Positions 3,200 to 64,000 of a DNA stretch of 64,000 nucleotides are shown piece after piece. Made by a program: the position numbers and the translations under genes. The notes beneath the pieces were generated by a model. That model made no database searches. It was not told where the DNA came from and saw nothing but the letters and a program-made list of their open reading frames with translations. Where the stretch lies: positions 66,960,001 through 67,024,000 of the forward strand of contig OZ241830.1 in assembly GCA_965202585.1 (NCBI GenBank). The letters are read 5' to 3'. The DNA is from Thalia democratica (Eukaryota). The first letter of the stretch is position 1; each line of letters opens with the position of its first letter.

Positions 3200-4075
3200 A
3201 AAAATATTTACTGAATACCTATACAGAGTTGTAAGAATTTTTTATTAACTTGGTGCTGTACACCCGGTCTCATTCTTTTTATTTTATATCAACATCTTTT
3301 CATTGATTCAATCATCATAAAATTTCTGTTTGAGTAGTCTATACTAAAAATAGATTCACAATTTAGCATTTCCTAACAATTATATTCAAAGTATTAAATA
3401 CAGCGTCAAAATATACATTAATGTGAAATTATCTACTATCTCAGGGTTGCTTCTTTACCTGGAAAAACCTGGAATTTCAACAATTTTCACATGTTCAGTA
3501 GTAAAATTTCGATTTGACTTAAAAAACCTATCATATGAATAGAAAATTTTTGTCATCATCAAATTTTTTTTTTAATTAAAAAACATACTTAATGTAGATT
3601 TAAAGTATCTTTGCAGTGTTTTATACTATTTACCACAGTTTCTTACCTTAAACTAATGACCATCTTTAAACTAAAAACCGACCCAAAAATGTGTACTTAA
3701 AAAAACATGATAAAATGCTGAAAAAACGAGTGACAACCCTGTTATCTCTATATTTACTTGTATGGTCTACTTCTCAACTTTCATTGCCTTCTGATAAGTA
3801 CTTCTTGGAACGTTAGTTTAATGGCTCACTATGACGCTTACTCTTTTTTCTATTATTTGTTATTTCGATATTTTGAATTTGCTGTTTATTAATTTCTCAG
3901 CTGCTATCACTTGATACATACTTATTTACTGTTGTAAAACGATTTGTGGTACTTTTATCTACTTTAAAACTTTCAATAGTTTCTACTTCTGCAGCTCCTT
4001 CATTATCTGCTAAACTGATTTTACTAACTTAACTTCTGCACCTTCTGCAACTGCTGAAAAGCTGCTTCTCAGTAA
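3200..4075 (-). repeat. Dispersed repeat family X, copy A (decayed unidentified ORF), interrupted by a MITE
   Basis: Alignable by eye with 4400-4782 (direct) and 32690-33290 (inverted). Confidence 0.7.
3442..3741. mobile_element. MITE, CAGGGTTGCC-TIR family, 6-bp TSD
   Basis: TIRs cagggttgc...gacaaccctg. Flanks ctatct/ttatct (5/6). The interior is the reverse complement of the copies at 41402 and 53279. Confidence 0.85.
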
Positions 4076-34920: not shown

Positions 34921-35152
34921 CAATAATGGGAATTTTAAACTATTTGTTTGTTAAATCTTTTTTATTTATTTTAAGTTTATCAAAAAAACCGTAAATATTG
35001 TAAAAGTTTTAAAAAAATTCTACGGTTTTAATAAAACAAATTATAGTAGGTTTGTAATGAAAGACGAAAATCATAATGAGAGCAGTGTTTTCAATTCTAG
35101 TAACCCACATAATACATCTAAAGAAATTATAAATGAATATTTAGGTATTTAA

Positions 35153-35834
35153 GGGCATAGGGGGGGGTAAACACCCTTTTTTGGTTTTTGATCTTATTTT
35201 ATATAGTTTTTACTAAGCTACAAGATGCTTTTTACAGATTAAAAAAATTCAAAATAATTTTTGAGATATAGCCGGTTAAAGTCGGAAGCGACAATAGGAT
35301 CCTTATGGGAGGCGCAAACTAAAACGGCAAATAACTAGAAATCACTAAAAATCTATCTCCTCCTACGTTTTTTGAGATAACTACCTCAAATTTTCAGGAA
35401 ATGTTCCTTGCAGTATTTAGAAAATTCTGTCGGAACAGATTTTAAAAAAATTAAAAAATAAAAATTTTAAAACAAAAAAACAAAAAAAAAACTGTTTTTT
35501 TTGTTTATTTTTTATATAAAATTTTTATTTTTTATTTTTTTCAAAATTCCTTCCGACAGAATTTTCTAAATATATCAAGGAACATTTCCTGAAAGTTTGA
35601 AGTAGTTATCTCAAAAAACGTAGGAGAAGATAGATTTTTAGTAAAATAGTCTATTTTTGCCGTTTTAGTTTGCGCCTCCCATAAGGAACCTATTGTCGCC
35701 TCCGACTTTAACCGGCTATATCTCAAAAATTATTTTGAATTTTTAAAATCTGTAAAAAGCATCTTGTAGCTTAGTAAAAACTATATAAAATAAGATCAAA
35801 AACCAAAAAAGGGTGTTTACCCCCCCCTATGCCC
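35153..35834. mobile_element. 682-bp fold-back MITE with TTAA TSD and GG...CC ends (Kolobok-like)
   Basis: TTAA|gggcataggggggg...ccccccctatgccc|TTAA. The arms of about 335 bp are near-perfect inverted repeats. Confidence 0.88.
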
Positions 35835-35986
35835 TTAATCTATTAAAATAAGAAGAATTGGAGGATTTAAAAATATTATATGTTGGTTAGCAAGTTAGTT
35901 AGTAGTACCAAATTAAAAAGAAATTAAGATCATTGATTAAAAGCCATCAGTGATGTAGAAAATGCATCGTGTATTTGTATTTTTAC

Positions 35987-40649: not shown

Positions 40650-41910
40650 TATTTTATAATTTAACTAATAAGTATGTATTCATTTAATGGCATTACAAAT
40701 ATTCAATACAACGTTGAATGTCCATCTAACTGTTGTTTTCTTAAGCCAAAATTCATTAAAAAAATTGATAAAAGTTTTGAACAAAAACATAAATAGGTCA
40801 AATCATGAAGTTTACCTTGAGTTTAATTATCTATTCAAAACCAGGAAAAAATTCAATTATTTAATGTTAAAAATTAGAAAATCTAAAGAAGTAACAGTTA
40901 ATACAAACAAATATATTTCTGTTGACCAAATTTGCCAACTGACCAAGTTTTGTAACTCAAGTATTCCATCTGAGGATAAAAGTACTTTGCCCTTTTTGTT
41001 AAGTATTTTAATGAAACTATTTTAGATATATGTATATAGTCTAGGTGTAAATAGTTCTTCTACTTTGTATATTGATAGAACTATTGATCGTAGTGAATAT
41101 TTTATTACTCCTATTACAAATTTTAATACTAAATTGTATAGGCAAAGTACTAAGAAAAACCCTATTTAAATGGGTTGTTTTTACTACACACATCTACTTT
41201 AAGTAAAAAAGATTTTTTTTAATTTTTTGACCATTTAAAAAATGTTTTGTCATCTTGTTGCTCATGTTAAAGGTGATTCTGATGTTTGGAAAACAAATTC
41301 ATTTTATGTTACTGATCAAGAAAAGGGTATAATATCAGCAATAGATGATGTTGTTCCTAATTGTCAAAGAATTCTATGTTCTAGGCACATTAATGAAAAC
41401 ACAGAGTTGCCACTTACTTTTTCAAAAAAATTTGCAGGTTTTCCAATTTTCTTCCAATTTTCAAAGGTACACATTTTTGGGTCTATTTATAGTAGAGTTA
41501 AGTTAAAGGTAAGAAACTGTGTTGAATAATATAAAAACATTGAAAAGATACTGTGCAGCTACTTTAAACATGTTTTTTAATAAAAAATTTTTTGATGATG
41601 ACAAAAATTTTTATTTGTATGATATATTTTTTAAGTCAAATCGATATTTTACTACTAAACATGTAAAAACTGTTGAAATTTTAGGTTTTTCCAGGTTTTT
41701 TATTTCGCCTAAATTGTCAAGTTTTCAGGTAAAGTGGTAACCCTAAAAACATTATATTAAAACTACAATCAAAAGTTTTAAAAAATATATTTAAAAAGTT
41801 GACGGAATGTAAAACCTATGATAGTTTCCTTGAATTAAGAAACTCAATTGTAACTAATTCTAAGTAGGTAGTAATATTAAAGTTTCTGGTTATGTTTTAA
41901 ATCAAATAGA
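40650..41910 (+). mobile_element. Decayed Mutator-like (MULE) transposase interrupted by a MITE
   Basis: YVTDQEKGIISAIDDVVPNCQRILCSRHINEN is the MULE D...CxxH motif. Removing the MITE plus one TSD restores the frame (RHINENIILKLQSKVLKNIFKKLTEC). Confidence 0.8.
41402..41745. mobile_element. MITE, CAGGGTTGCC-TIR family, 6-bp TSD AAAACA
   Basis: cagagttgccactt...aagtggtaacccta. AAAACA at 41396-41401 and 41746-41751. Confidence 0.88.
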
Positions 41911-48350: not shown

Positions 48351-48760
48351 AACAAAATTTTTGTGTACAACTAAGACCTTTGACATATAGGAAAAGTTTT
48401 AAATTTTTAGTGAATTGGAATCTGTTTGCTACAATTAAAATTTGAGAATTTATTACCTTAAAGAAAAGATCACACGGAAAACATTTTATTTTTATTCAGA
48501 ATTATAGTTAGTTTATAAGGTGAATATATATAAACAAAAGTAAAAATTCTAGAAATCGTATATGATGAGATGACAAGTTATAAAAGATGAAAAACCAAAA
48601 TGTAAGGACTTTTAAATAAAGCACCACCTGTAGACAAGTGGCACTGTAACTGGGTAACTGTAACTTTCAATTACTGTTAGTGCTAATATAGTAAATAAAT
48701 AATAATAATTGCCTTCTCAGGATTTTAAGATATTCTACAAACTAAAAACTCTAACATGAT

Positions 48761-48950
48761 CAGGGTTGCCACTCATTTTTTCAAGATTTTTTCCAGGTTT
48801 TTCAAATATCCAGGTTTTTATAAATACACATTTTGGGTCTATTTTTAGTTTTAAGTCAAGTTTAAGGTTATAAACTGTGTTAAATAGTATAAAAACATTA
48901 AAAAGATACTGTAAATTTATTTTTTAATAAGAAAAATTTTTGAAAATACA
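48761..48950. mobile_element. Truncated MITE, CAGGGTTGCC-TIR family
   Basis: Left TIR cagggttgccact and an interior matching the 53279 copy. No right TIR. Confidence 0.75.
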
Positions 48951-49528
48951 AATTAAAAACTCCAATATGATAAATAAATTTAACTGTGCTGGTACCTAAT
49001 TAAATGGGTATTTGGAAAAGTAAGACAGTAACCATAAAATGCTTTTTACAATTTTAAAGAAACAAAGCTTATTGCTGACTATGTTTCTAAAATGAATTTT
49101 ACTGTAAAACAACATTTTGTAAATAGTGGATTAACCAGTTATCAAAGCTTCACTTTTAAAGAGCATCACCAATGTTTGAAATGTTGAATCAAAATTTCCC
49201 AAAATAACAAGCAATCGTAACAAACTTGCCATTAAACTAATAATAAGTCAAAATAATACTTTCTGATTAAAAGTTTGGCAGCAGAAACCCTCTGGCTTTC
49301 TTCAATTCATAAAATTCTGTTTGATTGAAGTTGAACTCCAAACTCAACTTCTGTGTGTGTGTGTGTTGACCTCACCTGTAAGAAAAAAATATTACAATAT
49401 ATTATTTAATGGTTGTTACTTTTCAGTTGTACAATGTTTAGTAACATGTATATAATATGGCAGTTCATGCCCATAACTTTGTATTGAAAAAAAATTAAAT
49501 GTTTATGTTTACTGTATTGTCATATTAA

Positions 49529-50207
49529 GGGCATAGGGGGGTAAACACCCTTTTTTTGTTTTTGATCTTATTCTATATAGTTTTTACTAAGCTACAAGAT
49601 GCTTTTTACAGATTTTAAAAATTTAAAATAATTTTTGAGATATAGTCGGTCAAAGTTGGAGGCAACAATAGGATCCTTATGGGAGGAGCAAACTAAAACG
49701 GCAAATAACTAAAAATCACTAAAAATCTATCTTCTCCTACGTTTTTTGAGATAACTACCTCAAATTTTTTTGGAAATGTTCCTTGCAATATTAAAAAATT
49801 CTGTTGGAACAGAATTTAAAAAAATTAAAAAATAAAAATTTTACAACAACAAAAAATAAAAAAAAAGTTTTTTTTGTTTGTTTTTTATATAAAATTTTTA
49901 TTTAAAACTTTTTTTAATTTCTTCTGACAGAATTTTCTAAATATATCAAGAAACATTTCCTGAAAATTTGAGGTAGTTATCTCAAAAACGCAGAGAAGAT
50001 AGATTTTTAGTGAAATAGTCTATTTTTGCCATTTTAGTTTGCGCCTCCCATAAGGAACCTATTGTTGGCTCCAACTTTGACCGGCTATATCTCAAAAATT
50101 GTTTTGAATTTTTTGAATCTGTAAAAAGCATTTCATAGCTTGGTAAAAACTATATAAAATAAGATCAAAAACCAAAAAAGGGTGTTTACCCCCCCCCCCC
50201 TATGTCC
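49529..50207. mobile_element. Second copy of the Kolobok-like fold-back MITE
   Basis: TTAA|gggcataggggg...cccctatgtcc|TTTA. Alignable end to end with 35153-35834. Confidence 0.88.
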
Positions 50208-50829
50208 TTTATGTTTACTTTTTTTGCAAAATGCATTTCAAATATGTAATTAATAATGCTTCAATAAATAAAACGACCCATTTTTAGGGTTTAATTCTTT
50301 TAAATATATGACTTATAGAATTATATAAAAGTGTAAAAAACTAATTAAATTATACATTATTCTGCATTTGAGTGAAGACAAGTAAGTTCACATATTGCCT
50401 TTTACAAGCATAGATATGAATTATCAGTATACGTATTGTATTGACATATTTAATATTTCAATTAAGCAGAAACTGTCAGCTTAAAATAGTTGGTAGGTGA
50501 CAAACATACATGTAGGAACATTTTTATAGTTGGTTTATATTTGATTTTTTCTAAATGACTATCACTGTTACCAATAACTCTTCCCCTTGATCAGTTACTT
50601 TTTTCTTGTTATTAATTTTATGATTTTAAATATCACTGTTACCCCTAACCCATGCCTTTGGCTGGTTACTTTTTTCTTATTAATTTTTATCTATTTTTAT
50701 TTTTTATGCCTAATAATTAGAAAATCTGTTGAAACAAAATTAATAATTAAAAAATAAAAATAAAAAATGTTTATGATTTTTTTTGTTCATTGTTTTTATA
50801 TAATTTTAATTTTTCAATTTTATTTTTAC

Positions 50830-51112
50830 TTTTGCTCTGAAAATTTTTTTTTAAATATTGCAAGACACATTTCCTGAAAGTTTGAATTATCTAAAAAAAC
50901 TTAGGATGAGATTGATTTTTTGTGAAATAGTCTTTTTTTACCTTTTTAGTTCGCACCTCCCATAAGGAACCTATTGTGGTCTCCAGCTTTGACCTGCTTT
51001 ATTTCAAAAACTATTTTCAATTTTTTAAATCTGTAAAAAGCAACTTGTAGCTTAGTTAAAACTCAACAAAATAAGATCAAATTGTGAAAGAAGTTATTTA
51101 CCTCCTATGCCC
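50830..51112. mobile_element. Solo right arm of the Kolobok-like MITE (diverged)
   Basis: cctcccataaggaacctattg...ctcctatgccc. No left arm. Confidence 0.7.
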
Positions 51113-51939
51113 CTAACTTCTACATTATCTAAAATAGAAGTATAAATCCTATGTTTACTTACCATATCTGATTAACCAAATATTTTGGAAAAACTTTTGC
51201 CTGCAATGTATTTTATAGCTATGAAATTAGTTTTGCAAAGCAACTAAACTTCATTTTTTTTACAGTATTTTAAAAATAAGTTTATAAATTGTTTTTCAGT
51301 GCACCGCAGTGCTATTAAAGGCATAAAATGTAAGACTTTTTATTCTTATTTAAAAGCTCTAAGTATTAACTACAAGTCAATTTTTGTTGAGTACAAAATT
51401 TTAATAAATTTTTCAGTTCAAGTATTTTTTAAAGTATCTGATACAAACTTTTAAGCTGCAACTTTGCCTTTATCAACTCTATCAAAAATTTAAACAATCA
51501 CATTAATTTTCATTATTTTGGATCAATTGACCTCAATTTTCTGGAAACATTCCTTAAACAGTTTAAACAATATGAATATTTGAATATAAATAGATTGAAA
51601 AATAAAAATTTAGATAAAAAATAAGGCAAAACAGGTAATACTTCTATTAACTTTTCAAAATTAAACTATAAAAAAATTTCTACATTCAATAGATTAAAAA
51701 AAAAATAGCAAAAGACTTTCTGTAGAAACTGAAAAATATTATTATTTATTTTATTAATAATATTATATATTGAGAAAGAGATTGATTTGAAGCAAAATAG
51801 TTCATTTTTAACTTTTTAGTTTGCACCTTCCAAAAAGAACCTATTGAACTCAACAATCATGAACTTTATATCTCAAAAATTGCTCTGAATTTAGCTAAGC
51901 AAAGTATTTGAGAGCTTATATAAAAACATATTAATATAA

Positions 51940-52650
51940 TTAAGGCCATAGAGCAGGGTTTCTTTTTTTTTCAAACTCCCCCCTTTAAAGAAATTAAAAA
52001 GGCTATTGCCCCCTCCAACAAGAATACTAAAAAAACTTCCATTTAAAACACCTAAGACCTTTATTTTTGCTCTTCATCTGCAACTGAAGAATATCTAGTA
52101 TAGGTTTCAAAATTTAAATATTGCTCCCCCCCCCAATTTGCCCCTTAACTAATAATTGCCCCCAAGTTACTAAAATCTCTTCCACTTTGGGAAACCCTGC
52201 CATAAAGGGATCCACCTTGATTTTTAAAAATTGATCTTATTTTTTGAGTTTTATCTGAGTTATCAGACATTTTTAACCAATTAAAAAACCTGAAAATAAT
52301 TTTTGAGATATAAACAACAAAAGTTAAAGACCTTGATAGGTTTTTAATGGAAGGAGCAACCCTAAAAACTCTAAAAAGGATTTCATTAAAAATTTATCTC
52401 CTTCATTTTCTACCAATATCTTCAAAATTTTACAGAAAGTTCAATTACAAATATTTAAATCTAATAAATGAAGTATATTTTTCATTTCAAAATATATAAT
52501 TTATATAAAAAACACTTTTTTTGCTTTTTGATTCTATTTTATTTTCTTAAATTCCAATATTTAAAGTCAATATTGAACTGTTAAAGTAAAATTTTCTAAA
52601 AGTTAAAGATCTCAAAATATTAAGAAGATAAATTTTTAGTGATTTTTTTT
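51940..52650. mobile_element. Older diverged relative of the Kolobok-like MITE, hosting a nested hAT MITE
   Basis: ttaaggcc(atag)...gatcttatt...aataatttttgagatata...ggaaggagcaacc resembles the left arm of the 35153 element. Confidence 0.5.
51954..52199. mobile_element. 246-bp hAT-type MITE
   Basis: TIR cagggtttc...gaaaccctg. 8-bp flanks ccatagag/ccataaag (7/8). Confidence 0.8.
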
Positions 52651-53278: not shown

Positions 53279-53616
53279 CAGGGTTGCCACTTGTTTTTTT
53301 TTCCAGGTTTTCCAAATTTCTTCCAGGTTTTTAAAAGTACACATTGTTGGGTCTATTTTTAGTTTAAAGTTAAGTTTAAGGTAAGAAACTGTGTTAAATA
53401 GTATGAAAACTTTGAAAAGATACTATAAAGCTACTTTAAATATGTTTCTTAAAAAAATGTTTGATGATGATAATTTTTTTTTGTTTTGGTCAAATCGAAA
53501 TTTTACTACTGAACATGTGAAAATTGTTAAAATTTCAGGTTTTTTCATGTTTTTTTTTTTGCCTAAATTGTTAAACTCAAGGTTTTTCCAAGATTACAAG
53601 TAAAGTGGCAACCCTT
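53279..53616. mobile_element. MITE, CAGGGTTGCC-TIR family, 6-bp TSD TAAGAA
   Basis: cagggttgccactt...aagtggcaaccctt. TAAGAA at 53273-53278 and 53617-53622. Confidence 0.9.
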
Positions 53617-54374
53617 TAAGAAATACAGGACTGCCTTTCATTTTTAGGAAATTTCTTCCAGGTTTTCTGAGATTAGCGTCTTTTTGGATCACATTTTTCG
53701 AGATCACATTTTTGTTGAAAACAATTTTCTAGACAACATTTTTTAAGTGTTCCGTGATTGGCTTACTAAAAGGTTACTAAAGGTTAAAGTTAAATTTATT
53801 TTATACTTACAAAAAAATATATGATATGTAAGCAAGTTAAAATAAATATTACGATTTTCACGTTAATAGAAAAGTAAACAAAACAAAATTTAGATAATCA
53901 GCAAAAGATATTTTATTAAATAAAAATTACAAAAAATAAATTAAAATAAATAAAAATAAATAAATAAATTAAAATACACCTTCAGAAAAGAAAAAAAAAA
54001 TCAATAGAAAATATTATATATGAAAACCTGAAAAATATTTTAATAAAATAGTAACAAGTTTAAGAATAGTTATTAAAACCAAAATACTAAATAATAAAAA
54101 TTATGTTAATGATATAAAAGTTTAAAACCATTCTTTTATAAGTTTAGGTAATAAACCAATTTATATCAATCTAAAAATTTATTAACAAAGAAAAAGAAAA
54201 TATAATCATATTAAAATTTTATGCCATTTAATTATAAAACTATATATATCTACATAAAAAAAAATTATTCGTGGAATGTATAGAAGTTATGTTTAAAACG
54301 TAACGTGTATCATTTACTAATCGACCGTTTGAAACTTATCATCAAAAACATTCATTTGGTTGTAATAAACAGTC

Positions 54375-57300
54375 TAGTACCAGTACAAATCTGACTGATT
54401 CATTTCTCAATATAAATAACTGAAACTTTGCAAATATGTAATTTAGGGGTATCTCTTGGTACCGCTATATTTTTATGCATCTAGCTTAAATATTTTTAAA
54501 GCTGTGACCGCCTGAAATTTACCTTAAATAAACACAGTCGGTTGACTTTTAAAAAGACAACTTAGTACTGCTGGACCTCTAACTCCTTTATTTGTCAATA
54601 AAAACATATTAAACTTTGCCAATATGTTCTCTTATGTTTTCACTTGGTTAAAATTATTTATCTCATTTCTAACATGTTCGGTTTTGAAAATATGATTTGA
54701 CCAAATAAATCAGCAAAATTGTTGTAAATTCCGTATAAAAACACGTTCATTTTATTAAAAACAAAACAACGTAGTACCAGTACAAATCTGACTGACTCAT
54801 TTCTCAATATAAATAACTGAAACTTTGCAAATATGTGATTTAGGGGTATCTCTTGGTACCGCTATATTTTTATGCATCTAGCTTAAATATTTTTTAAAGC
54901 TGTGACCGCCTGAAGTTTACCTTAAATAAACACAGTCGGTTGACTTTTAAAAAGACAACTTAGTACTGCTGGACCTCTAACTCCTTTATTTGTCAATAAA
55001 AACATATTAAACTTTGCCAACATGTTATCTTATGTTTTCACTTGGTTGAAATTAATTATCTCATTTCTAACATGTTCGGTTTTGAAAATATGATTTGACC
55101 AAATAAATCAGCAAAATTGTTGTAAATTCCGTATAAAAACACGTTCATTTTATTAAAAACAAAACAACGTAGTACCAGTACAAATCTGACTGACTCATTT
55201 CTCAATATAAATAACTGAAACTTTGCAAATATGTAATTTAGGGGTATCTCTTGGTACCGCTATATTTTTATGCATCTAGCTTAAATATTTTTAAAAGCTG
55301 TGACCGCCTGAAATTTACCTTAAATAAACACAGTCGGTTGACTTTTAAAAAGACAACTTAGTACTGCTGGACCTCTAACTCCTTTATTTGTCAATAAAAA
55401 CATATTAAACTTTGCCAATATGTTCTCTTATGTTTTCACTTGGTTAAAATTATTTATCTCATTTCTAACATGTTCGGTTTTGAAAATATGATTTGACCAA
55501 ATAAATCAGCAAAATTGTTGTAAATTCCGTATAAAAACACGTTCATTTTATTAAAAACAAAACAACGTAGTACCAGTACAAATCTGACTGACTCATTTTT
55601 CAATATAAATAACTGAAACTTTGCAAATATGTAATTTAGGGGTATCTCTTGGTACCGCTATATTTTTATGCATCTAGCTTAAATATTTTTAAAGCTGTGG
55701 CCGCCTGAAGTTTACCTTAAATAAACACAGTCGGTTGACTTTTAAAAAGACAACTTAATACTGCTGGACCTCTAACTCCTTTATTTGTCAATAAAAACAT
55801 ATTAAACTTTGCCAATATGTTATCTTATGTTTTCATTTGGTTGAAATTAATTATCTCATTTCTAACATGTTCGGTTTTGAAAATATGATTTGACCAAATA
55901 AATCAGCAAAATTGTTGTAAATTCCGTATAAAAACACGTTCATTTTATTAAAAACAAAACAACGTAGTACCAGTACAAATCTGACTGACTCATTTCTCAA
56001 TATAAATAACTGAAACTTTGCAAATATGTAATTTAGGGGTATCTCTTGGTACCGCTATATTTTTATGCATCTAGCTTAAATATTTTTAAAGCTGTGACCG
56101 CCTGAAATTTACCTTAAATAAACACAGTCGGTTGACTTTTAAAAAGACAACTTAGTACTGCTGGACCTCTAACTCCTTTATTTGTCAATAAAAACATATT
56201 AAACTTTGCCAATATGTTATCTTATGTTTTCACTTGGTTGAAATTAATTATCTCATTTCTAACATGTTCGGTTTTGAAAATATGATTTGACCAAATAAAT
56301 CAGCAAAATTGTTGTGAATTCCGTATAAAAACACGTTCATTTTATTAAAAACAAAACAACGTAGTACCAGTACAAATCTGACTGACTCATTTCTCAATAT
56401 AAATAACTGAAACTTTGCAAATATGTAATTTAGGGGTATCTCTTGGTACCGCTATATTTTTATGCATCTAGCTTAAATATTTTTAAAGCTGTGACCGCCT
56501 GAAATTTACCTTAAATAAACACAGTCGGTTGACTTTTAAAAAGACAACTTAGTACTGCTGGACCTCTAACTCCTTTATTTGTCAATAAAAACATATTAAA
56601 CTTTGCCAATATGTTCTCTTATGTTTTCACTTGGTTAAAATTATTTATCTCATTTCTAACATGTTCGGTTTTGAAAATATGATTTGACCAAATAAATCAG
56701 CAAAATTGTTGTAAATTCCGTATAAAAACACGTTCATTTTATTAAAAACAAAACAACGTAGTACTAGTACAAATCTGACTGACTCATTTCTCAATATAAA
56801 TAACTGAAACTTTGCAAATATGTAATTTAGGGGTATCTCTTGGTACCGCTATATTTTTATGCATCTAGCTTAAATATTTTTAAAGCTGTGGCCGCCTGAA
56901 GTTTACCTTAAATAAACACAGTCGGTTGACTTTTAAAAAGACAACTTAGTACTGCTGGACCTCTAACTCCTTTATTTGTCAATAAAAACATATTAAACTT
57001 TGCCAATATGTTATCTTATGTTTTCATTTGGTTGAAATTAATTATCTCATTTCTAACATGTTCGGTTTTGAAAATATGATTTGACCAAATAAATCAGCAA
57101 AATTGTTGTAAATTCCGTATAAAAACACGTTCATTTTATTAAAAACAAAACAACGTAGTACCAGTACAAATCTGACTGACTCATTTCTCAATATAAATAA
57201 CTGAAACTTTGCAAATATGTAATTTAGGGGTATCTCTTGGTACCGCTATATTTTTATGCATCTAGCTTAAATATTTTTAAAGCTGTGACCGCCTGAAATT

Positions 57301-58666
57301 TACCTTAAATAAACACAGTCGGTTGACTTTTAAAAAGACAACTTAGTACTGCTGGACCTCTAACTCCTTTATTTGTCAATAAAAACATATTAAACTTTGC
57401 CAATATGTTATCTTATGTTTTCACTTGGTTGAAATTAATTATCTCATTTCTAACATGTTCGGTTTTGAAAATATGATTTGACCAAATAAATCAGCAAAAT
57501 TGTTGTAAATTCCGTATAAAAACACGTTCATTTTATTAAAAACAAAACAACGTAGTACCAGTACAAATCTGACTGACTCATTTCTCAATATAAATAACTG
57601 AAACTTTGCAAATATGTAATTTAGGGGTATCTCTTAGTACCGCTATATTTTTATGCATCTAGCTTAAATATTTTTAAAGCTGTGACCGCCTGAAGTTTAC
57701 CTCAAATAAACACAGTCGGTTGACTTTTAAAAAGACAACTTAGTACTGCTGGACCTCTAACTCCTTTATTTGTCAATAAAAACATATTAAACTTTGCCAA
57801 TATGTTATCTTATGTTTTCACTTGGTTGAAATTAATTATCTCATTTCTAACATGTTCGGTTTTGAAAATATGATTTGACCAAATAAATCAGCAAAATTGT
57901 TGTAAATTCCGTATAAAAACACGTTCATTTTATTAAAAACAAAACAACGTAGTACCAGTACAAATCTGACTGACTCATTTCTCAATATAAATAACTGAAA
58001 CTTTGCAAATATGTAATTTAGGGGTATCTCTTGGTACCGCTATATTTTTATGCATCTAGCTTAAATATTTTTAAAGCTGTGACCGCCTGAAATTTACCTT
58101 AAATAAACACAGTCGGTTGACTTTTAAAAAGACAACTTAGTACTGCTGGACCTCTAACTCCTTTATTTGTCAATAAAAACATATTAAACTTTGCCAATAT
58201 GTTCTCTTATGTTTTCACTTGGTTAAAATTATTTATCTCATTTCTAACATGTTCGGTTTTGAAAATATGATTTGACCAAATAAATCAGCAAAATTGTTGT
58301 AAATTCCGTATAAAAACACGTTCATTTTATTAAAAACAAAACAACGTAGTACCAGTACAAATCTGACTGACTCATTTCTCAATATAAATAACTGAAACTT
58401 TGCAAATATGTAATTTAGGGGTATCTCTTGGTACCGCTATATTTTTATGCATCTAGCTTAAATATTTTTAAAGCTGTGACCGCCTGAAATTTACCTTAAA
58501 TAAACACAGTCGGTTGACTTTTAAAAAGACAACTTAGTACTGCTGGACCTCTAACTCCTTTATTTGTCAATAAAAACATATTAAACTTTGCCAATATGTT
58601 CTCTTATGTTTTCACTTGGTTGAAATTAATTATCTCATTTCTAACATGTTCGGTTTTAAAAATATT
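54375..58666 (+). repeat. Tandem array of a 397-398 bp satellite, about 10.8 highly similar units
   Basis: Unit starts (tagtacc/tagtacaaatc) at 54375, 54772, 55170, 55568, 55965, 56362, 56759, 57156, 57553, 57950, 58347. Confidence 0.97.
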
Positions 58667-58789
58667 ATCATATAATATATTACCATACGAAAAATCATGT
58701 TAATACAAGTTGATAACAACTTTTTTTTTAAATTTAGTTAATAGTATATAATTTATCTTTATAATAAGAAAAATATTTTTAGGACCATT

Positions 58790-59620
58790 ATAAAAAGTTG
58801 CTATTTGTCAAAGAATATTACTAAAAATTGTTTATTTTTAAGTATTTATTATGATTTTTATTTAAAAAACGAACAAAACATAAAGTTTAAAAGCTTTTTA
58901 ACAACACGCTTAGTTGATTTATAACTCCTGAAATTTTCGAGTTATATTACAATTGCCTTTAGAACAATAAAAGAACAGTATTTCAAAGAAAAATACAAAA
59001 TATTGCAATTTTTCAAATTGCTTAATTAAAAATGGATTATTACAACTTGTTTACTTATTAAATCAGTAAAAAAAAGTTTAAAGACCATCCAAAAACTTGC
59101 TTAGTTGATCTATAACTTCTTGACATTTTCGAGCTACATTAAAATTGAATTTAGAACAACAAATGAACAGTATTTCAAAAAAAATATATATTAAATATTG
59201 CAATTTTTCAAAGAATATAACTAAAAATGGCTTATTTAAAAGAAGTTATTATGATTTTTCACTTAATAAATGAGTAAAAAAGGTTTAAAAACCATTTTAA
59301 AACACGTTTAATTGACTTTTAACTCTTTGATTTTTTTCTGAGCTTTGTTACAACTACCTTTAAAACATATCAAAAGAACAGTATTTTAAGAACAATTTAA
59401 AAAGTTGCATTATGTCAAAGTAAATTATCAAACAATGCTTATTTTAGAATAATATTTATGTTTTTTTTTACTTAAAAAATGAGTAAAAAAGCTGTACAAA
59501 CTGTTGAAAAACACGAATAATTGAATCAAACTCTTTTGAACTTTTTGAGCTACTTAAAAATAACCTTTAGAACGATAAAAGGACAAAAATTTAAGAACAA
59601 TATAAAAAAATGCAATACTT
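58790..59620 (+). repeat. About 4 old, diverged tandem units of about 190-210 bp
   Basis: The recurring block ttagttgat..aactc..ttttcgagct..tttagaacaa..gaacagtattt..ttgcaatttttcaaa appears near 58975, 59165, 59375 and 59580. Confidence 0.7.
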
Positions 59621-59664
59621 TAATGAAAGTTATATAAATGATTGATTATATAACATATGCTTAA

Positions 59665-62600
59665 TTAATGATTTAATTTCCCTACACACATAGAACAAAA
59701 GAATGATTCAGTTTTCTTAAGCCTTCTGGATATTTTTAGACACCTATCATGGAACCATCTTCCACATTTTTCTTCTTCGCATCCCGTCTGTAAAAGCAGA
59801 AAAGTTAAAGAATATAAAATAAGAAATAATTTATTATTTTTACATAGTGCTTAAGCTAAACATACCCATACATCGTTTTTTCTCCTACAATGTCCAGTTT
59901 CTTCGACCAGTTTTTTTCCGCATATGTAACAACATTCACTAGGAGGCCCTTAATTGTTATATTTGCTTGTTATATTGTATAAATTTTTATATAATCTTTA
60001 AGATCTTTACGAACAAACCTCCTACTTCTAGAAGCTTGTTTGCTATATCCTTGCGAATAACATCAGATGGCTTAACCTTAATATGTCTCACCGCTTCATT
60101 TGCCAATAAATGTGTTGCTAACTATTAATATGCATATTTCTTTAATAAATAAGTATAATAAATAACTATTAATTATTTGTATGCGTAACTAACCTGTAGC
60201 ATAACAACTTTTGAATTTATGGTCTCTATCGTTTCGAGGGAATCATGCGTAGTCTGAATGTAGTTTAACGTTTCTTTCATTAATTGACAAAGGTAATTCT
60301 CAAGACGTTGGTTTTCATTTTCAGATAGTTGAATTTCAATTTTTGTCCATGTTTTTTCGTCCATGTTTATAAACTAAAACAAATAAGTTAGTTTTATAGT
60401 GTATGTCAAACAAGCTACAAATAAATTACTGATTTATTTTTTAACAATCAAAAATTTACCAAAAAATACTATTTATTTGCTTACCAAAAACTTTGTAACT
60501 TTTCCTTTAAAAACAAAAAAAACTTTTTTTAAATGTTTTAAACTGGTTAACTCCTCGTCTGTAATAACTGTTTCAAAATCAAGATCGTCTAGACTTTTTT
60601 CGTCAATAAAGATTGTTGCTGTCTCTAAAACAATATTTTATCTTTTATTTGAACTGATTTGTTTACATAAATCATCAAAAACTAACCATTGGGATGAAAC
60701 AGCTTCATGTAAAACAGCCAAGTATCATTCGTCATTTCATTGTTAGGTTTTAATGAACAAAAGTCTTTATGCGATAAAACCAACTTTTCGTTTTTCTCAG
60801 CTGTGCACGCTAATACTTTAATGCAAGGTTTCAAATTCCACAGATAGTTTCTCTGTTATAGAGATTAAAGATAAAAATTTCTTTACTTTCTATAAATATT
60901 AAAAAAAACTTTAGTAACTAACGTCTTTGATTAGTTGATACAATTTAGCAGCATCAGTCGTATTTCCCTCCAAGGAGATGGAAGTAAGTACCTTTTGAAT
61001 AGTTTAAGTCATTAAATCTAGATTTTAAAACTTTGACTATTAAGTATTTACAATAACCTTTTGATCTTGTTTATAGAACGACTTGATATTTTTAGCATTT
61101 CGTTTTGTTTTTGTTTTGCATAAAGAAATTCCATCAATTGCTACTGCTGAATCTGTTTTACTCAGTTGTCTTTCGTTTTTTGTAGCGTTTCTCCAGTTAA
61201 TATGATGATTATCAATATACAAATTTTCATTGAACCTTTCATATGAAAAAATTAAATTAGTTTGTTCTAACTATTTGAAAAATACATATAACAAGTTTTT
61301 ACCTGAATTGATCACGGGCAAGCCGAAGAAAATTTCCAATTTCCCAAACTCCTGATCTTTTTCTGAAGTCATTTAATGCTTCTTCCTCTCTTTCAGGATG
61401 GGCTAGCTGGTGTTTTTTCAAGTTAGAAAAAAGAGCTTCAGCTGCCTGATTATTTTGTAAAAACTCTTTTTCACCAATTATTTTTAACATGATTCCTGTC
61501 CATAACGGTATTATAGGAGCCCATTGTTTTAAAAAATATTCAATGAAAAGTTTACAATATAAATCATTCAGAGGCAATGTTTGTTGTTTTGAATCGTTAT
61601 TCTTGATGGATTTTTCAACATCCTTTCGAATAATCTACAGAAGTATTAAATTAATAAATTAAACGTCCAATCTAAACACTTAAGTTTCAGTAAAAAAAAG
61701 AAAGTGCATTGACAACTTTTAAAAGCTTAATCAAACTTTTTTCAAATAAAAACCATCAAATCTTTTCTAAATTGAGATGTGTAAATAATCTCCTCTTCCA
61801 AATCATCAATCTCTTCTAAATATTTTGTGATTTGATTTTGATCGAATGTTTTTTCTACAAGTTCGTTCACTGCTTCGCTAAACATTATTTAGAATATTTT
61901 AGATATACTACTACTAGATCATATTATATAAATTTACTTACTCGTTATCTAGTAGACTGTTTAGGAGTTTTAAGTTTCCTCTAACTTCCTCTGTTACATC
62001 TATAAAAGGATAAATCATTAATTCAAAACCTTTGACTTTAACTAAATAATATTATTTGTTTATTACTTACATTTATTTAAGGTAATCGTACAAATAAGCT
62101 TGAAGATATATTGCACTTTTTCATAAGTTTCTGATGTTACCATCCTACAGCAAGATGTCATCAAAAGCTTTTTTAAATCTCCTTTGTATTTTTTTCCGAT
62201 TTTTCTGTCGCACCATCGTTTGAAACTATGCATCATATGAGATCCGCACAGATGGATTGTGCAATCTATGCAGCTGTCGAACAGGTCTTTTTGCAATTTT
62301 TCTGTTAATAGGTTTAACTATTTTTACTACAAATCATAGAAACCACTGTTATTAAAGCTTTAATTCTTAAAAAAAAATTAACTAACGCTCGCTGGTAACT
62401 ACTGAATGTACGAAGAATAAATAATTTTTTAGACTTGTGCCATTGAATTCTTCTGCCGCGGAGTGAATTATTGGCAGACTACAATCACACTCAACTCTTT
62501 TAAAAGACTTACCTAAGTTTTAAACACTTGATAATAAATTAATCTTTATTTTATTCCAAATAGTGTAATGCGATAAAACCTACCTCCTGATATTTTTTTG

Positions 62601-62710
62601 AAGTCTCTTTTTAAAAGAGACATCCAGCACTTGTAGTTATGTTTGTCTGTGTGTACAGAAATCATATCACTTACTACAAGACATGGTGTGTTTTTCGATT
62701 TAACCGTCTC
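59665..62710 (-). mobile_element. Multi-exon Mutator/Foldback-type transposase gene with Ulp1-like and C-terminal PHD regions (N-terminus not found)
   Basis: GT-AG exons reading VSDMISVHTDK..CWMSLL, VECDCSLPIIHS..FNG.SL..YL, IHLCGSHMMHSF (CxxH), LYCKLFIEYFLKQWAPIIPLWTG...NNQAAEALFS, KDFCSLKPNNEMTNDTWLFYMKL (Ulp1-like), then CYICG and GCEEEKCGRWFHDRC...FFCSMC* (PHD). Confidence 0.75.
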
Positions 62711-63321
62711 AATTTCTCAAATTAAGAAAATTCTGTGACCTTACTTCACATTTAAAAATTAAAACTGAAAATTTAATAGTTGTGCATAAAACCTTTATAT
62801 CATTTTTAGTTCTAAACTGTTGTGTTATTTTTGAAAAGTTTATGCATTCTACTATGCTTGATATAAAATTATAAAAGAATGTAAAACTAATTTCAATTAA
62901 TTATATCTTTTTATCTTACTATAAACAAAAAGAAAACAAACTTTTATTACTCTGTAAAAGGATATCAAATATTATTTGAATTAGAGAAACCTCGAAAGGT
63001 CATGTGTTATACTGATGCAAGTTAACATAATGAGAAAATAAAATGCAGACAAGATATTACTGATGTAATGTTGCAAAAGTTTAAAACGCTGCTTTACAAA
63101 CCAGCCATAGAAAGTATTGGGAGAATCTAGCCACAGCCTGCTGCAGTAAACATGTTATTCATGTTAAATAGACACTTTTAATATTAAATTGTGAAATTTA
63201 AAGTAAAGTTTTAACAATGTTACTTTTTATGTTCACTTTGAAATAAGTCCTAAGTATTTGAATGTTAATTTATTTTATACATACTTAAGTATATTGCTGT
63301 TAGAATGATTACTAAGTAAAG

Positions 63322-64000
63322 TTTAATAAAATGAACGTGTTTTTATACGGAATTTAAAACAATTTTGCTGATTTATTTGGTCAAATCATATTTTCAAAAC
63401 CGAACATGTTAGAAATGAGATAATTAATTTCAACCAAGTGAAAACATAAGAGAACATATTGGCAAAGTTTAATATGTTTTTATTGACAAATAAAGGAGTT
63501 AGAGGTCCAGCAGTACTAAGTTGTCTTTTTAAAAGTCAACCGACTGTGTTTATTTAAGGTAAACTTCAGGCGGTCACAGCTTTAAAAAATATTTAAGCTA
63601 GATGCATAAAAATATAGCGGTACCAAGATATACCCCTAAATTACATATTTGCAAAGTTTCAGTTATTTATATTGAGAAATGAGTCAGTCAGATTTGTACT
63701 AGTACTACGTTGTTTTGTTTTTAATAAAATGAACGTGTTTTTATACGGAATTTACAACAATTTTGCTGATTTATTTGGTCAAATCATATTTTCAAAACCG
63801 AACATGTTAGAAATGAGATAATTAATTTCAACCAAGTGAAAACATAAGATAACATATTGGCAAAGTTTAATATGTTTTTATTGACAAATAAAGGAGTTAG
63901 AGGTCCAGCAGTACTAAGTTGTCTTTTTAAAAGTCAACCGACTGTGTTTATTTAAGGTAAATTTCAGGTGGTCACTGCTTCAAAAATATTTAAGCTAGAT
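63322..64000 (-). repeat. Second array of the 397-bp satellite, inverted relative to the first, running off the window end
   Basis: Reverse complement of the 54375-58666 unit, about 1.7 units visible. Confidence 0.96.

What the first reader, a model, noticed from the sequence alone, without database searches (positions are those of the whole stretch)
54375..64000. Candidate giant Foldback element: inverted 397-bp satellite arrays bracketing a MULE-Ulp1-PHD transposase
Seen: about 10.8 young tandem units point inward from the left, and the same unit restarts in the opposite orientation at 63322. Between them lie an older array of about 200-bp units and a spliced Mutator-type transposase gene. 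A rare variant (tactagt) is shared by left unit 7 and a right-arm unit. Short reiterated motifs at about 53675-53745 (gatcacattttt twice) could be the left terminus. Known: Foldback elements such as Drosophila FB-NOF have long modular TIRs of tandem repeats around a Mutator-related gene. Inference: an element over 10 kb whose TIRs have expanded into satellite DNA, making it a mobile satellite factory. Caveats: the inner ends of the two arrays differ by about 65 bp of unit phase, and the right terminus is outside the window.
Basis: partly seen in the sequence, partly recalled or inferred. Interest (0 to 1): 0.8.

Follow-up and report, generated by a model that had tools for sequence, protein, structure and literature searches.

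The report
Foldback-type transposon with satellite-expanded arms
This is one internally deleted copy of a large Foldback-like DNA transposon, probably of the Mutator type, whose inverted end-repeats have grown into a 397-bp satellite; it is a clear new example of a known way in which mobile elements give rise to satellite DNA.

Summary
A 397-bp array lies at 54375-58665 (10.8 units, 98%). The same unit lies inverted from 63322 to the window end. Between them are a decayed ~200-bp array and a multi-exon minus-strand gene.

The Foldback reading is largely supported by outside evidence. Marine-metagenome contigs of a sister family (79% identical in the gene) carry arms of at least 1.14 kb that are 96% identical in inverted orientation. 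Those arms are homologous to the 397-bp unit and to window DNA outside the array (54103-54375, 53714-53819). They hold only 1.3-1.9 units, so the window's family expanded its arms. Both inner arm junctions recur at family-level depth in sequencing runs.

This copy is not autonomous. About 2.7 kb, holding the 5' exons, is deleted at 62709/62713.

The gene is real (dN/dS 0.25). The PHD finger is confirmed. The Mutator assignment rests on motifs and a sub-threshold Pfam chain. Ulp1 was not confirmed.

The right terminus and the target-site duplication lie outside the window. The scan had already noted other Foldback/Mutator elements in this genome (s1-291865). It is a new member of a known kind, closest to Tetris and Tm1.

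The parts
53680..54374 (+). Outer (terminal) domain of the left arm. The true terminus lies somewhere between 53617 and 53708. It contains 15-bp reiterations at 53691-53743.
   Evidence: Homologous to the outer part of both arms of the sister family: L016 5083-6038 matches window 55038-54103 at 73.9%; L016 6584-6686 matches 53819-53714 at 76%; L019 340-1150 matches 54103-54894. TRF finds period 15, 3.5 copies. An unrelated MITE ends at 53616.
54109..54170 (.). 62-nt block identical in the window and in both arms of the sister family; candidate cis-acting site.
   Evidence: It is the longest exact match anywhere between the two families; the longest in the exons is 44 nt. Its fold is not significant, z -1.56.
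54375..58665 (+). Left arm: 397-bp satellite, 10.8 units at 98%, with a 3-unit higher-order pattern. The unit is itself an old dimer.
   Evidence: The internal dimer is positions 15-85 against 203-273, 72%.
58666..58779 (.). Spacer between the arm and the ~200-bp array. The junction at 58665 is ancestral.
   Evidence: The same junction is in contigs L002 and L005 with their own SNPs. It is collinear in the sister family: L016 4662-5764 matches 59008-57942.
58780..59650 (.). Degenerate ~200-bp subterminal array, ~4.3 units, 3' of the gene.
   Evidence: It is conserved in position in the sister family (L014 5245-5705; the unit number differs in L017).
59668..59982 (-). Two exons of a C-terminal PHD finger.
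   Evidence: Pfam PHD E 1.6e-5, 25.2 bits; also found in the sister family. dN/dS is 0.37-0.44.
59990..60852 (-). Conserved C-terminal exons. They look Ulp1-like by eye only and are unconfirmed.
   Evidence: dN/dS is 0.13-0.34. There is no Pfam hit and no SENP/Ulp1 hit in the PDB.
61043..62709 (-). Transposase core exons kept in this copy: second-D block 62385-62516, H.C..H block 62072-62317, NN.A.E......K block 61302-61628. The exon at 62561-62707 is cut at its 5' side.
   Evidence: dN/dS is 0.09-0.34. Homology chain: the 111-aa exon matches P0024, which matches P0029, which gets Pfam MULE at E 0.0058.
62709..62713 (.). Internal deletion junction, about 2.7 kb missing. The acidic N-terminal exon, the Cys/His-rich exon and the putative first-D exon are absent.
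   Evidence: L001, L011, L012 and L025 leave the window at 62709. Loose ends fall at 62709 and 62713. The size comes from the sister family, L019 2028-4684. The window's own junction is bridged by an X5 contig covering 62680-62858.
62713..63321 (-). 5' internal non-coding region of the element.
   Evidence: Collinear with the sister family: L019 1798-2028 matches 62949-62720 at 70.7%, and 63710-62720 matches L019 1025-2028. Its depth matches the gene's (670.8 and 681 in X1).
63322..64000 (-). Right arm: the same 397-bp unit inverted, at least 1.7 units, cut by the window end.
   Evidence: An X1 unitig covering 63136-63350 (depth 681) crosses the junction.

Best explanation
Window ~53680 to beyond 64000 is one copy of a large (over 10 kb) cut-and-paste DNA transposon with Foldback-type long inverted arms. 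Each arm has an outer unique domain followed by tandem ~400-bp units. In the ancestor there were one to two units per arm, as the sister family still shows. In the window's family the units were amplified in place, by unequal exchange or replication slippage, into a 98%-homogeneous 397-bp satellite (10.8 units in the left arm). Multi-unit blocks were duplicated along the way. Full-length relatives encode a multi-exon protein: an acidic N-terminus, a Cys/His-rich region, a DDE core of probable Mutator type, conserved C-terminal exons and a PHD finger. The window's copy has lost about 2.7 kb holding the 5' exons, so it cannot make transposase and could move only in trans. Shown: the arms and their homology to true TIRs, the deletion, multi-copy status, purifying selection on the gene, and the PHD finger. 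Inferred: the Mutator catalytic mechanism, transposase binding in the arms, and mobility of this particular copy.
For: The inverted arrays are confirmed. In the sister family, L019 1-1144 is the inverted copy of L016 6375-5233 at 95.9%. L017, from another sample, confirms this independently. Those arms match the 397-bp unit at 73-78% with 1.3 and ~1.9 units. They also match window 54103-54375 and 53714-53819, outside the array. The inner junction at 58665 recurs in L002 and L005 and is collinear in the sister family. The junction at 63322 is crossed by a depth-681 unitig, similar to gene contigs at 685-1075. The majority letter at many sites has depth 685-1075 against 27-112 for the window's own letter. 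Consensus contigs also leave the window at 62709 and 62713. Together these indicate tens of copies. Satellite-to-gene depth is about 10-40 in all four runs. Rearranged and deleted relatives exist (L010, L019). dN/dS is 0.25 over 480 codons against about 1 in shifted frames. The PHD finger is confirmed. MULE-like blocks align with P0024, P0029, P0022 and P0017.
Against: The right terminus and any target-site duplication lie outside the window. No flank of another copy was seen, so transposition, as opposed to segmental copying, is not directly shown. Depths are assembler word depths of coded runs whose identity with the window's source is unknown. No window or locus piece, nor P0017, P0021, P0022 or P0024, gets a Pfam MULE or FLYWCH hit; P0029 gets MULE only below the cutoff. 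The putative first-D exon drew helicase-like neighbours in the Atlas. The two arms end at different unit phases.
Confidence: 0.8

Rival explanations
1. Non-mobile rearrangement. A satellite array lay next to a decayed transposon gene, and one inversion, with a breakpoint inside the array, left two inward-pointing blocks. The arrays are not transposon ends.
For: One inversion reproduces the inward orientation and unequal unit phases (inference). No TSD or right terminus was seen.
Against: The sister family has the same unit in both arms as 96%-identical inverted repeats, in contigs from different samples. DNA outside the window's array is homologous to those arms. Both inner junctions occur at family-level depth and in other contigs.
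Confidence: 0.06
2. A transposon inserted into, or beside, a pre-existing host satellite. The 397-bp repeat is host satellite DNA and not part of the element.
For: The satellite is abundant (depth 9,333-40,934 in X1). L015 is a satellite-only contig.
Against: An insertion would leave the flanking units in direct orientation and continuous phase; here they are inverted. The unit and its junction with the element's ~200-bp array are conserved in a family 21% diverged. Satellite depth scales with gene depth in four runs.
Confidence: 0.05
3. The architecture is Foldback-like, but the transposase belongs to another DDE superfamily with a C/DxxH motif (hAT, P or Kolobok-like) and not to Mutator.
For: No Pfam MULE hit reaches threshold. 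The C(2)H motif is not exclusive to Mutator (my own knowledge). The AF2 model was too poor to classify, pLDDT 54.
Against: The block NN.A.E......K, with a K seven residues after the E, is the IS256/Mutator signature (my own knowledge). It aligns across P0024, P0029 and P0017. P0029's only Pfam hit is MULE. Atlas neighbours of the H.C..H exon include 46 of 100 clusters of the MULE clan. Known Foldback families with a transposase are Mutator/Phantom type (PMC3169594).
Confidence: 0.15

Closest known systems
Tetris, a Foldback transposon of Drosophila virilis with TIR-220 repeats (PMC4079207)
   Same: Foldback-like element whose TIRs contain internal tandem repeats of a few hundred bp. These repeats amplify into satellite-like arrays. 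The family has many rearranged forms.
   Different: Tetris is non-autonomous and no transposase is known for it. Here full-length relatives encode a conserved multi-exon DDE protein with a PHD finger. The unit is ~400 bp, itself an old dimer. Satellite arrays independent of the element, shown for TIR-220 by FISH, have not been shown here.
Tm1, a Mutator/Foldback family of root-knot nematodes; Phantom subclass (PMC3169594)
   Same: Composite TIRs of variable length, internally deleted and MITE-like derivatives, and a Mutator-type transposase with an N-terminal zinc-finger region in autonomous copies.
   Different: The Tm1 transposase (496 aa) scores clearly for Pfam FLYWCH and MULE; this protein does not. 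Tm1 has documented 9-bp TSDs; here they are untestable. Tm1 arms are short, with no kb-scale satellite. Tm1 has no PHD-bearing C-terminal extension.
Mutator and Ginger1 transposons with Ulp1 and PHD C-terminal domains in Hydra, lancelet and plants (PMC2836005); scan finding s1-291865 in this genome
   Same: A DNA-transposon protein carrying a C-terminal PHD finger after conserved extra exons, in an AT-rich animal genome rich in Foldback-like elements.
   Different: An Ulp1 (Peptidase_C48) domain could not be detected here by Pfam or PDB profile search. By eye, the catalytic His and Cys are not evident.
Drosophila FB elements (FB4, FB-NOF)
   Same: Long modular inverted arms built of tandem repeats, unequal arm lengths, and a Mutator-related coding capacity in some copies (my own knowledge).
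   Different: FB arm repeats are 10-31 bp modules; here the unit is ~400 bp behind a ~0.7-kb unique outer domain.

Membership tests
Foldback-like (Mutator/Foldback) DNA transposons | Long terminal inverted repeats built of tandem sub-repeats | tested here: met
   Window arms are 54375-58665 (+) and 63322-64000 (-), 98%. Sister-family arms are 95.9% identical over 1,144 nt and hold 1.3 and 1.9 units.
Foldback-like (Mutator/Foldback) DNA transposons | Mirrored terminal sequences at both outer ends | not testable with these tools
   The right end lies beyond the window. The left outer domain is homologous to both arms of the sister family. L019 starts 313 nt short of L016's end.
Foldback-like (Mutator/Foldback) DNA transposons | Target-site duplication of 8-10 bp (usually 9) | not testable with these tools
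   The right terminus is outside the window, and the metagenome contigs stop inside the arms.
Foldback-like (Mutator/Foldback) DNA transposons | Multi-copy family with deleted or rearranged derivatives | tested here: met
   Majority contigs have depth 685-1075 against 27-112 for the window's own letters. Alternative junctions occur at 62709/62713. L010 and L019 are derivatives. Flanks of other copies were not seen.
Mutator superfamily (MULE) transposase | Pfam MULE domain (PF10551) at or above the gathering score | tested here: not met
   No hit on any exon piece or on P0022, P0024 and P0017. Only the distant relative P0029 scores, at 17.5 bits against a cutoff of 27.6. The exons are short, so this is a weak test.
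Mutator superfamily (MULE) transposase | DDE core with a C/DxxH motif after the second D, and E followed by K/R seven residues later | tested here: inconclusive
   Blocks VECDCSLPIIHSAAEEF, IHLCGSHMMH and NNQAAEALFSNLK align with P0024, P0029, P0022 and P0017. They were read by eye against motifs recalled from the literature. The first D sits only in consensus contigs (L011 873-1103).
Ulp1 / Peptidase_C48 | Pfam PF02902 match or similarity to solved SENP/Ulp1 chains; catalytic His-Asp-Cys | tested here: not met
   No Pfam hit on window or sister exons. No SENP/Ulp1 chain at E up to 10. By eye only an N-terminal WLND-like motif is present, and no HW or DCG motif.
PHD finger | Pfam PF00628 at or above the gathering score | tested here: met
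   The window piece 59668-59850 gives 25.2 bits against 24, E 1.6e-5. The sister family gives 23.8 bits.
Satellite DNA | Long homogeneous tandem arrays, also at loci independent of the element | tested here: inconclusive
   The local array has 10.8 units at 98%. Satellite contig depth is 10-40 times the gene's depth. Independent arrays could not be looked for.

The most novel reading that the evidence does not exclude
The family captures a transposon-to-satellite transition in progress. An autonomous Foldback-type element has ~400-bp arm units that went from 1-2 copies (sister lineage) to arrays of ten or more. These arrays now make up hundreds to over a thousand units per genome, possibly including arrays that have escaped the element. 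A 62-nt invariant arm block would act as the transposase or cis-recognition site that keeps the arms under selection.
Probability: 0.3. Interest if true: 0.55.

Novelty: new member of a known kind. Interest (0 to 1): 0.42.

Why it matters
It gives a well-documented case, outside Drosophila, of satellite DNA arising inside the inverted arms of a Foldback-type transposon. The 'before' state (1.3-1.9 units in a sister lineage) and the 'after' state (10.8 near-identical units) can both be compared. Unlike Tetris, the coding partner is still attached. The host is a widespread marine planktonic animal whose repeats turn up in many Tara Oceans assemblies, so population-level variation in arm length can be studied in existing data. 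For annotation, about 10 kb of this window should be masked as one element, and the fragmentary gene should not be called a host gene.

Tried and rejected
- **Domain searches:** Pfam on all window and sister exon pieces found only PHD. PDB sequence and profile searches for the Ulp1-like and H.C..H exons found nothing relevant.
- **Atlas embeddings:** they gave MULE leads for one exon but helicase-like neighbours for another, so I treat them as weak.
- **Structure:** the AlphaFold model of relative P0024 from a 20-row alignment was poor (pLDDT 54), so no fold search was run.
- **Other sequence collections:** exact look-ups of satellite ORFs and of ORFs in 62713-63076 found nothing. The JGI metagenome and IMG/VR scans for the satellite, and the JGI scan for the 62-nt block, also found nothing. 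L015 is a satellite-only contig with no flank.
- **Second TIR pair:** I looked for a shorter pair between 58666-59700 and 62710-63321 and found only AT-rich noise.
- **Origin of the ~200-bp array:** it could be the ancestor of the 397-bp unit, but the similarity is marginal (72% over 64 nt; nhmmer E about 0.04), so this is left open.
- **Inverted unit-like fragment at 53472-53534:** it lies inside an unrelated MITE and is probably chance.
- **Hairpin in the 62-nt block:** not significant.
- **Rfam:** no family in the window.
- **Closed or out-of-range tools:** The neighbouring window could not be queried.
Full report
**Observation**

TRF reports one strong array at 54375-58665: period 397, 10.8 copies, 98% matches. 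The repeat finder shows the same unit in reverse complement from 63322 to the last base of the window (679 nt, 98%).

I split the array into units. Units differ from their consensus at 0-5 positions. The right-arm unit differs at 6 substitution or single-base positions.

Diagnostic variants repeat with a period of three units (units 3-4-5 match 6-7-8). The array therefore grew partly by duplication of multi-unit blocks. The unit is itself an old dimer (positions 15-85 against 203-273, 72%).

The left array ends at unit position ~321 (58665) and the right one at ~385 (63322). A degenerate ~200-bp array of ~4.3 units occupies 58780-~59650. Its similarity to the 397-bp unit is marginal.

**The gene**

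The minus strand from 62709 to 59668 carries a series of open blocks. Pfam recognises only a PHD finger, at 59668-59850 (E 1.6e-5, 25.2 bits against a cutoff of 24).

Exact look-ups of window ORFs in public assemblies returned about 20 short contigs from Tara Oceans and other marine metagenomes, 97-99% identical to the window. Three of them (L001, L011, L012), and later L013 and L025, leave the window at 62709. They continue with further exons: a Cys/His-rich exon and an exon with a possible first catalytic Asp.

A relative about 79% identical in DNA (L014, L016-L020) has the same exon series plus an acidic N-terminal exon. Over 480 aligned codons in eight blocks, dN/dS between the two lineages is 0.25. 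It is 0.92-1.06 in the shifted frames. This is a real protein-coding gene kept under selection.

A library-wide phmmer search with the 111-aa exon found mostly short metagenomic ORFs, plus a few longer proteins. In an alignment with P0024, P0029, P0022 and P0017, three blocks line up:

- a second-Asp block (VECDCSLPIIHSAAEEF, 62516-62385);
- an H.C..H block (62317-62072);
- an NN.A.E......K block (61628-61302).

From my own knowledge of the literature, these fit the IS256/Mutator pattern. P0029, found from P0024 at E 1.9e-12, has MULE as its only Pfam hit, and that hit is below threshold (E 0.0058).

I rate Mutator membership as probable, about 0.75, and not proven. Ulp1 was not detected by Pfam or by a PDB profile search. 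By eye only an N-terminal WLND-like motif is present.

**Multi-copy status**

I laid Logan contigs of four runs on 58600-63400. In run X1 the majority contigs over the gene have depth 685-1075. At many sites the window's own letter is carried at only 27-112.

Consensus contigs leave the window at 62709 and at 62713. One marine-metagenome contig (X5, 62680-62858) bridges the window's own junction.

The segment 62713-62983 (depth 670.8) has about the same depth as the gene. So does a unitig covering 63136-63350 that runs 29 nt into the satellite (depth 681). Satellite contigs are 10-40 times deeper than gene contigs in all four runs.

Contigs L002 and L005 carry the 58665 junction with their own SNPs, and L010 is a rearranged copy. 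My reading is a family of tens of copies, with both inner arm junctions as family features and many units per copy. These are assembler word depths from coded runs, so the numbers are rough.

**The decisive comparison**

In the sister family, L019 reaches 3.4 kb upstream of the Cys/His exon and L016 reaches 1.6 kb beyond L014's 3' end.

- L019 1-1144 is the inverted copy of L016 6375-5233 at 95.9%.
- L017, from another sample, confirms the 3' arm and its inverted match to L019.
- These arms match the window's 397-bp unit at 73-78%. They hold 1.3 units in the 5' arm and about 1.9 in the 3' arm, and the two tandem copies are 81% alike.
- They also match window DNA outside the array: 54103-54375 within long alignments, and 53714-53819 at 76%.
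- A 62-nt block (54109-54170) is identical in the window and in both sister arms. It is the longest exact match anywhere in the element.
- The junction between the ~200-bp array and the arm is collinear in both families (L016 4662-5764 against 59008-57942).
- The window's 62713-63321 is collinear with the sister's 5' internal region (L019 1798-2028 against 62949-62720).

So the whole stretch from about 53680 to the window end is one element. The arrays are its arms, and the arm repeats were few in the ancestor and expanded in the window's lineage. The window copy lacks about 2.7 kb (L019 2028-4684) holding the 5' exons.

**Left boundary**

An unrelated ~335-bp MITE with termini CAGGGTTGCCAC...GTGGCAACCCT ends at 53616. 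Homology to the sister arm reaches 53708, where contig L016 ends. The right terminus and the TSD are outside the window.

**Comparison with known systems**

Foldback-like elements with tandem repeats in their TIRs that seed satellite arrays are known from Tetris in Drosophila virilis (PMC4079207). Mutator/Foldback families with composite TIRs, 9-bp TSDs and FLYWCH-MULE transposases are known from Tm1 (PMC3169594). Mutator and Ginger transposases with Ulp1 and PHD extensions are known from Hydra, lancelet and plants (PMC2836005).

Earlier notes of this scan report several Foldback/Mutator elements in this same genome, one of them followed up (s1-291865). This is therefore a new member of a known kind. 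Its value is that the coding partner, the ancestral-like state and the expanded state are all at hand.

**Limits**

No flank of another copy and no TSD were seen. Protein classification rests on short exons. The structure prediction failed.

Noticed in passing
window 53283-53616; also 41401-41745 (+), 3457-3743 (-), partial 48758-48923: A MITE-like ~335-bp repeat with termini CAGGGTTGCCAC...GTGGCAACCCT. A second, diverged 5' end of it seems to start at ~53628 and to break off at ~53672, just left of the Foldback element. This may mark the insertion point.
   Followed up: partly
window 54109-54170; L016 6033-5972; L019 345-406: A 62-nt block is perfectly conserved between two families that are otherwise 21-27% diverged, and is present in both arms of the sister family. 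Its ends form a 9-bp inverted repeat. It is a candidate transposase-binding or other cis site.
   Followed up: partly
window 63127-63160: About 33 nt are shared by many different very deep contigs (bin depth 29,288 in X1, with many loose ends at 63126 and 63160). This looks like a piece of a far more abundant repeat inside the element's 5' internal region.
   Followed up: no
window 55171-57553: The 397-bp array has a three-unit higher-order pattern: units 3-4-5 repeat as 6-7-8 by diagnostic variants.
   Followed up: yes
L010 1-970; L019 5024-5154: These are rearranged and deleted relatives. L010 joins a satellite piece (unit positions ~198-265) to window-equivalent 60773 through a 5-nt microhomology, and breaks again at 59873. 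L019 is a sister-family derivative lacking about 2.8 kb (L014 2531-5357).
   Followed up: partly
L014 34-843; L019 2654-2887: The N-terminal exon of the full-length protein is an acidic region with 90-bp (30-codon) in-frame tandem repeats (KPEENPxEKEKSDED...). Repeat number differs between contigs.
   Followed up: no
window 49525-52400 and 35149-35839: Another dispersed repeat family has several direct and inverted copies (75-91% identity) just left of the finding.
   Followed up: no
L001-L025 (source records): The element family is assembled in more than 20 Tara Oceans and other marine metagenome samples. The host is therefore a widespread marine planktonic animal, and its repeats contaminate 'microbial' metagenome assemblies and protein catalogues as short ORFs.
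   Followed up: no
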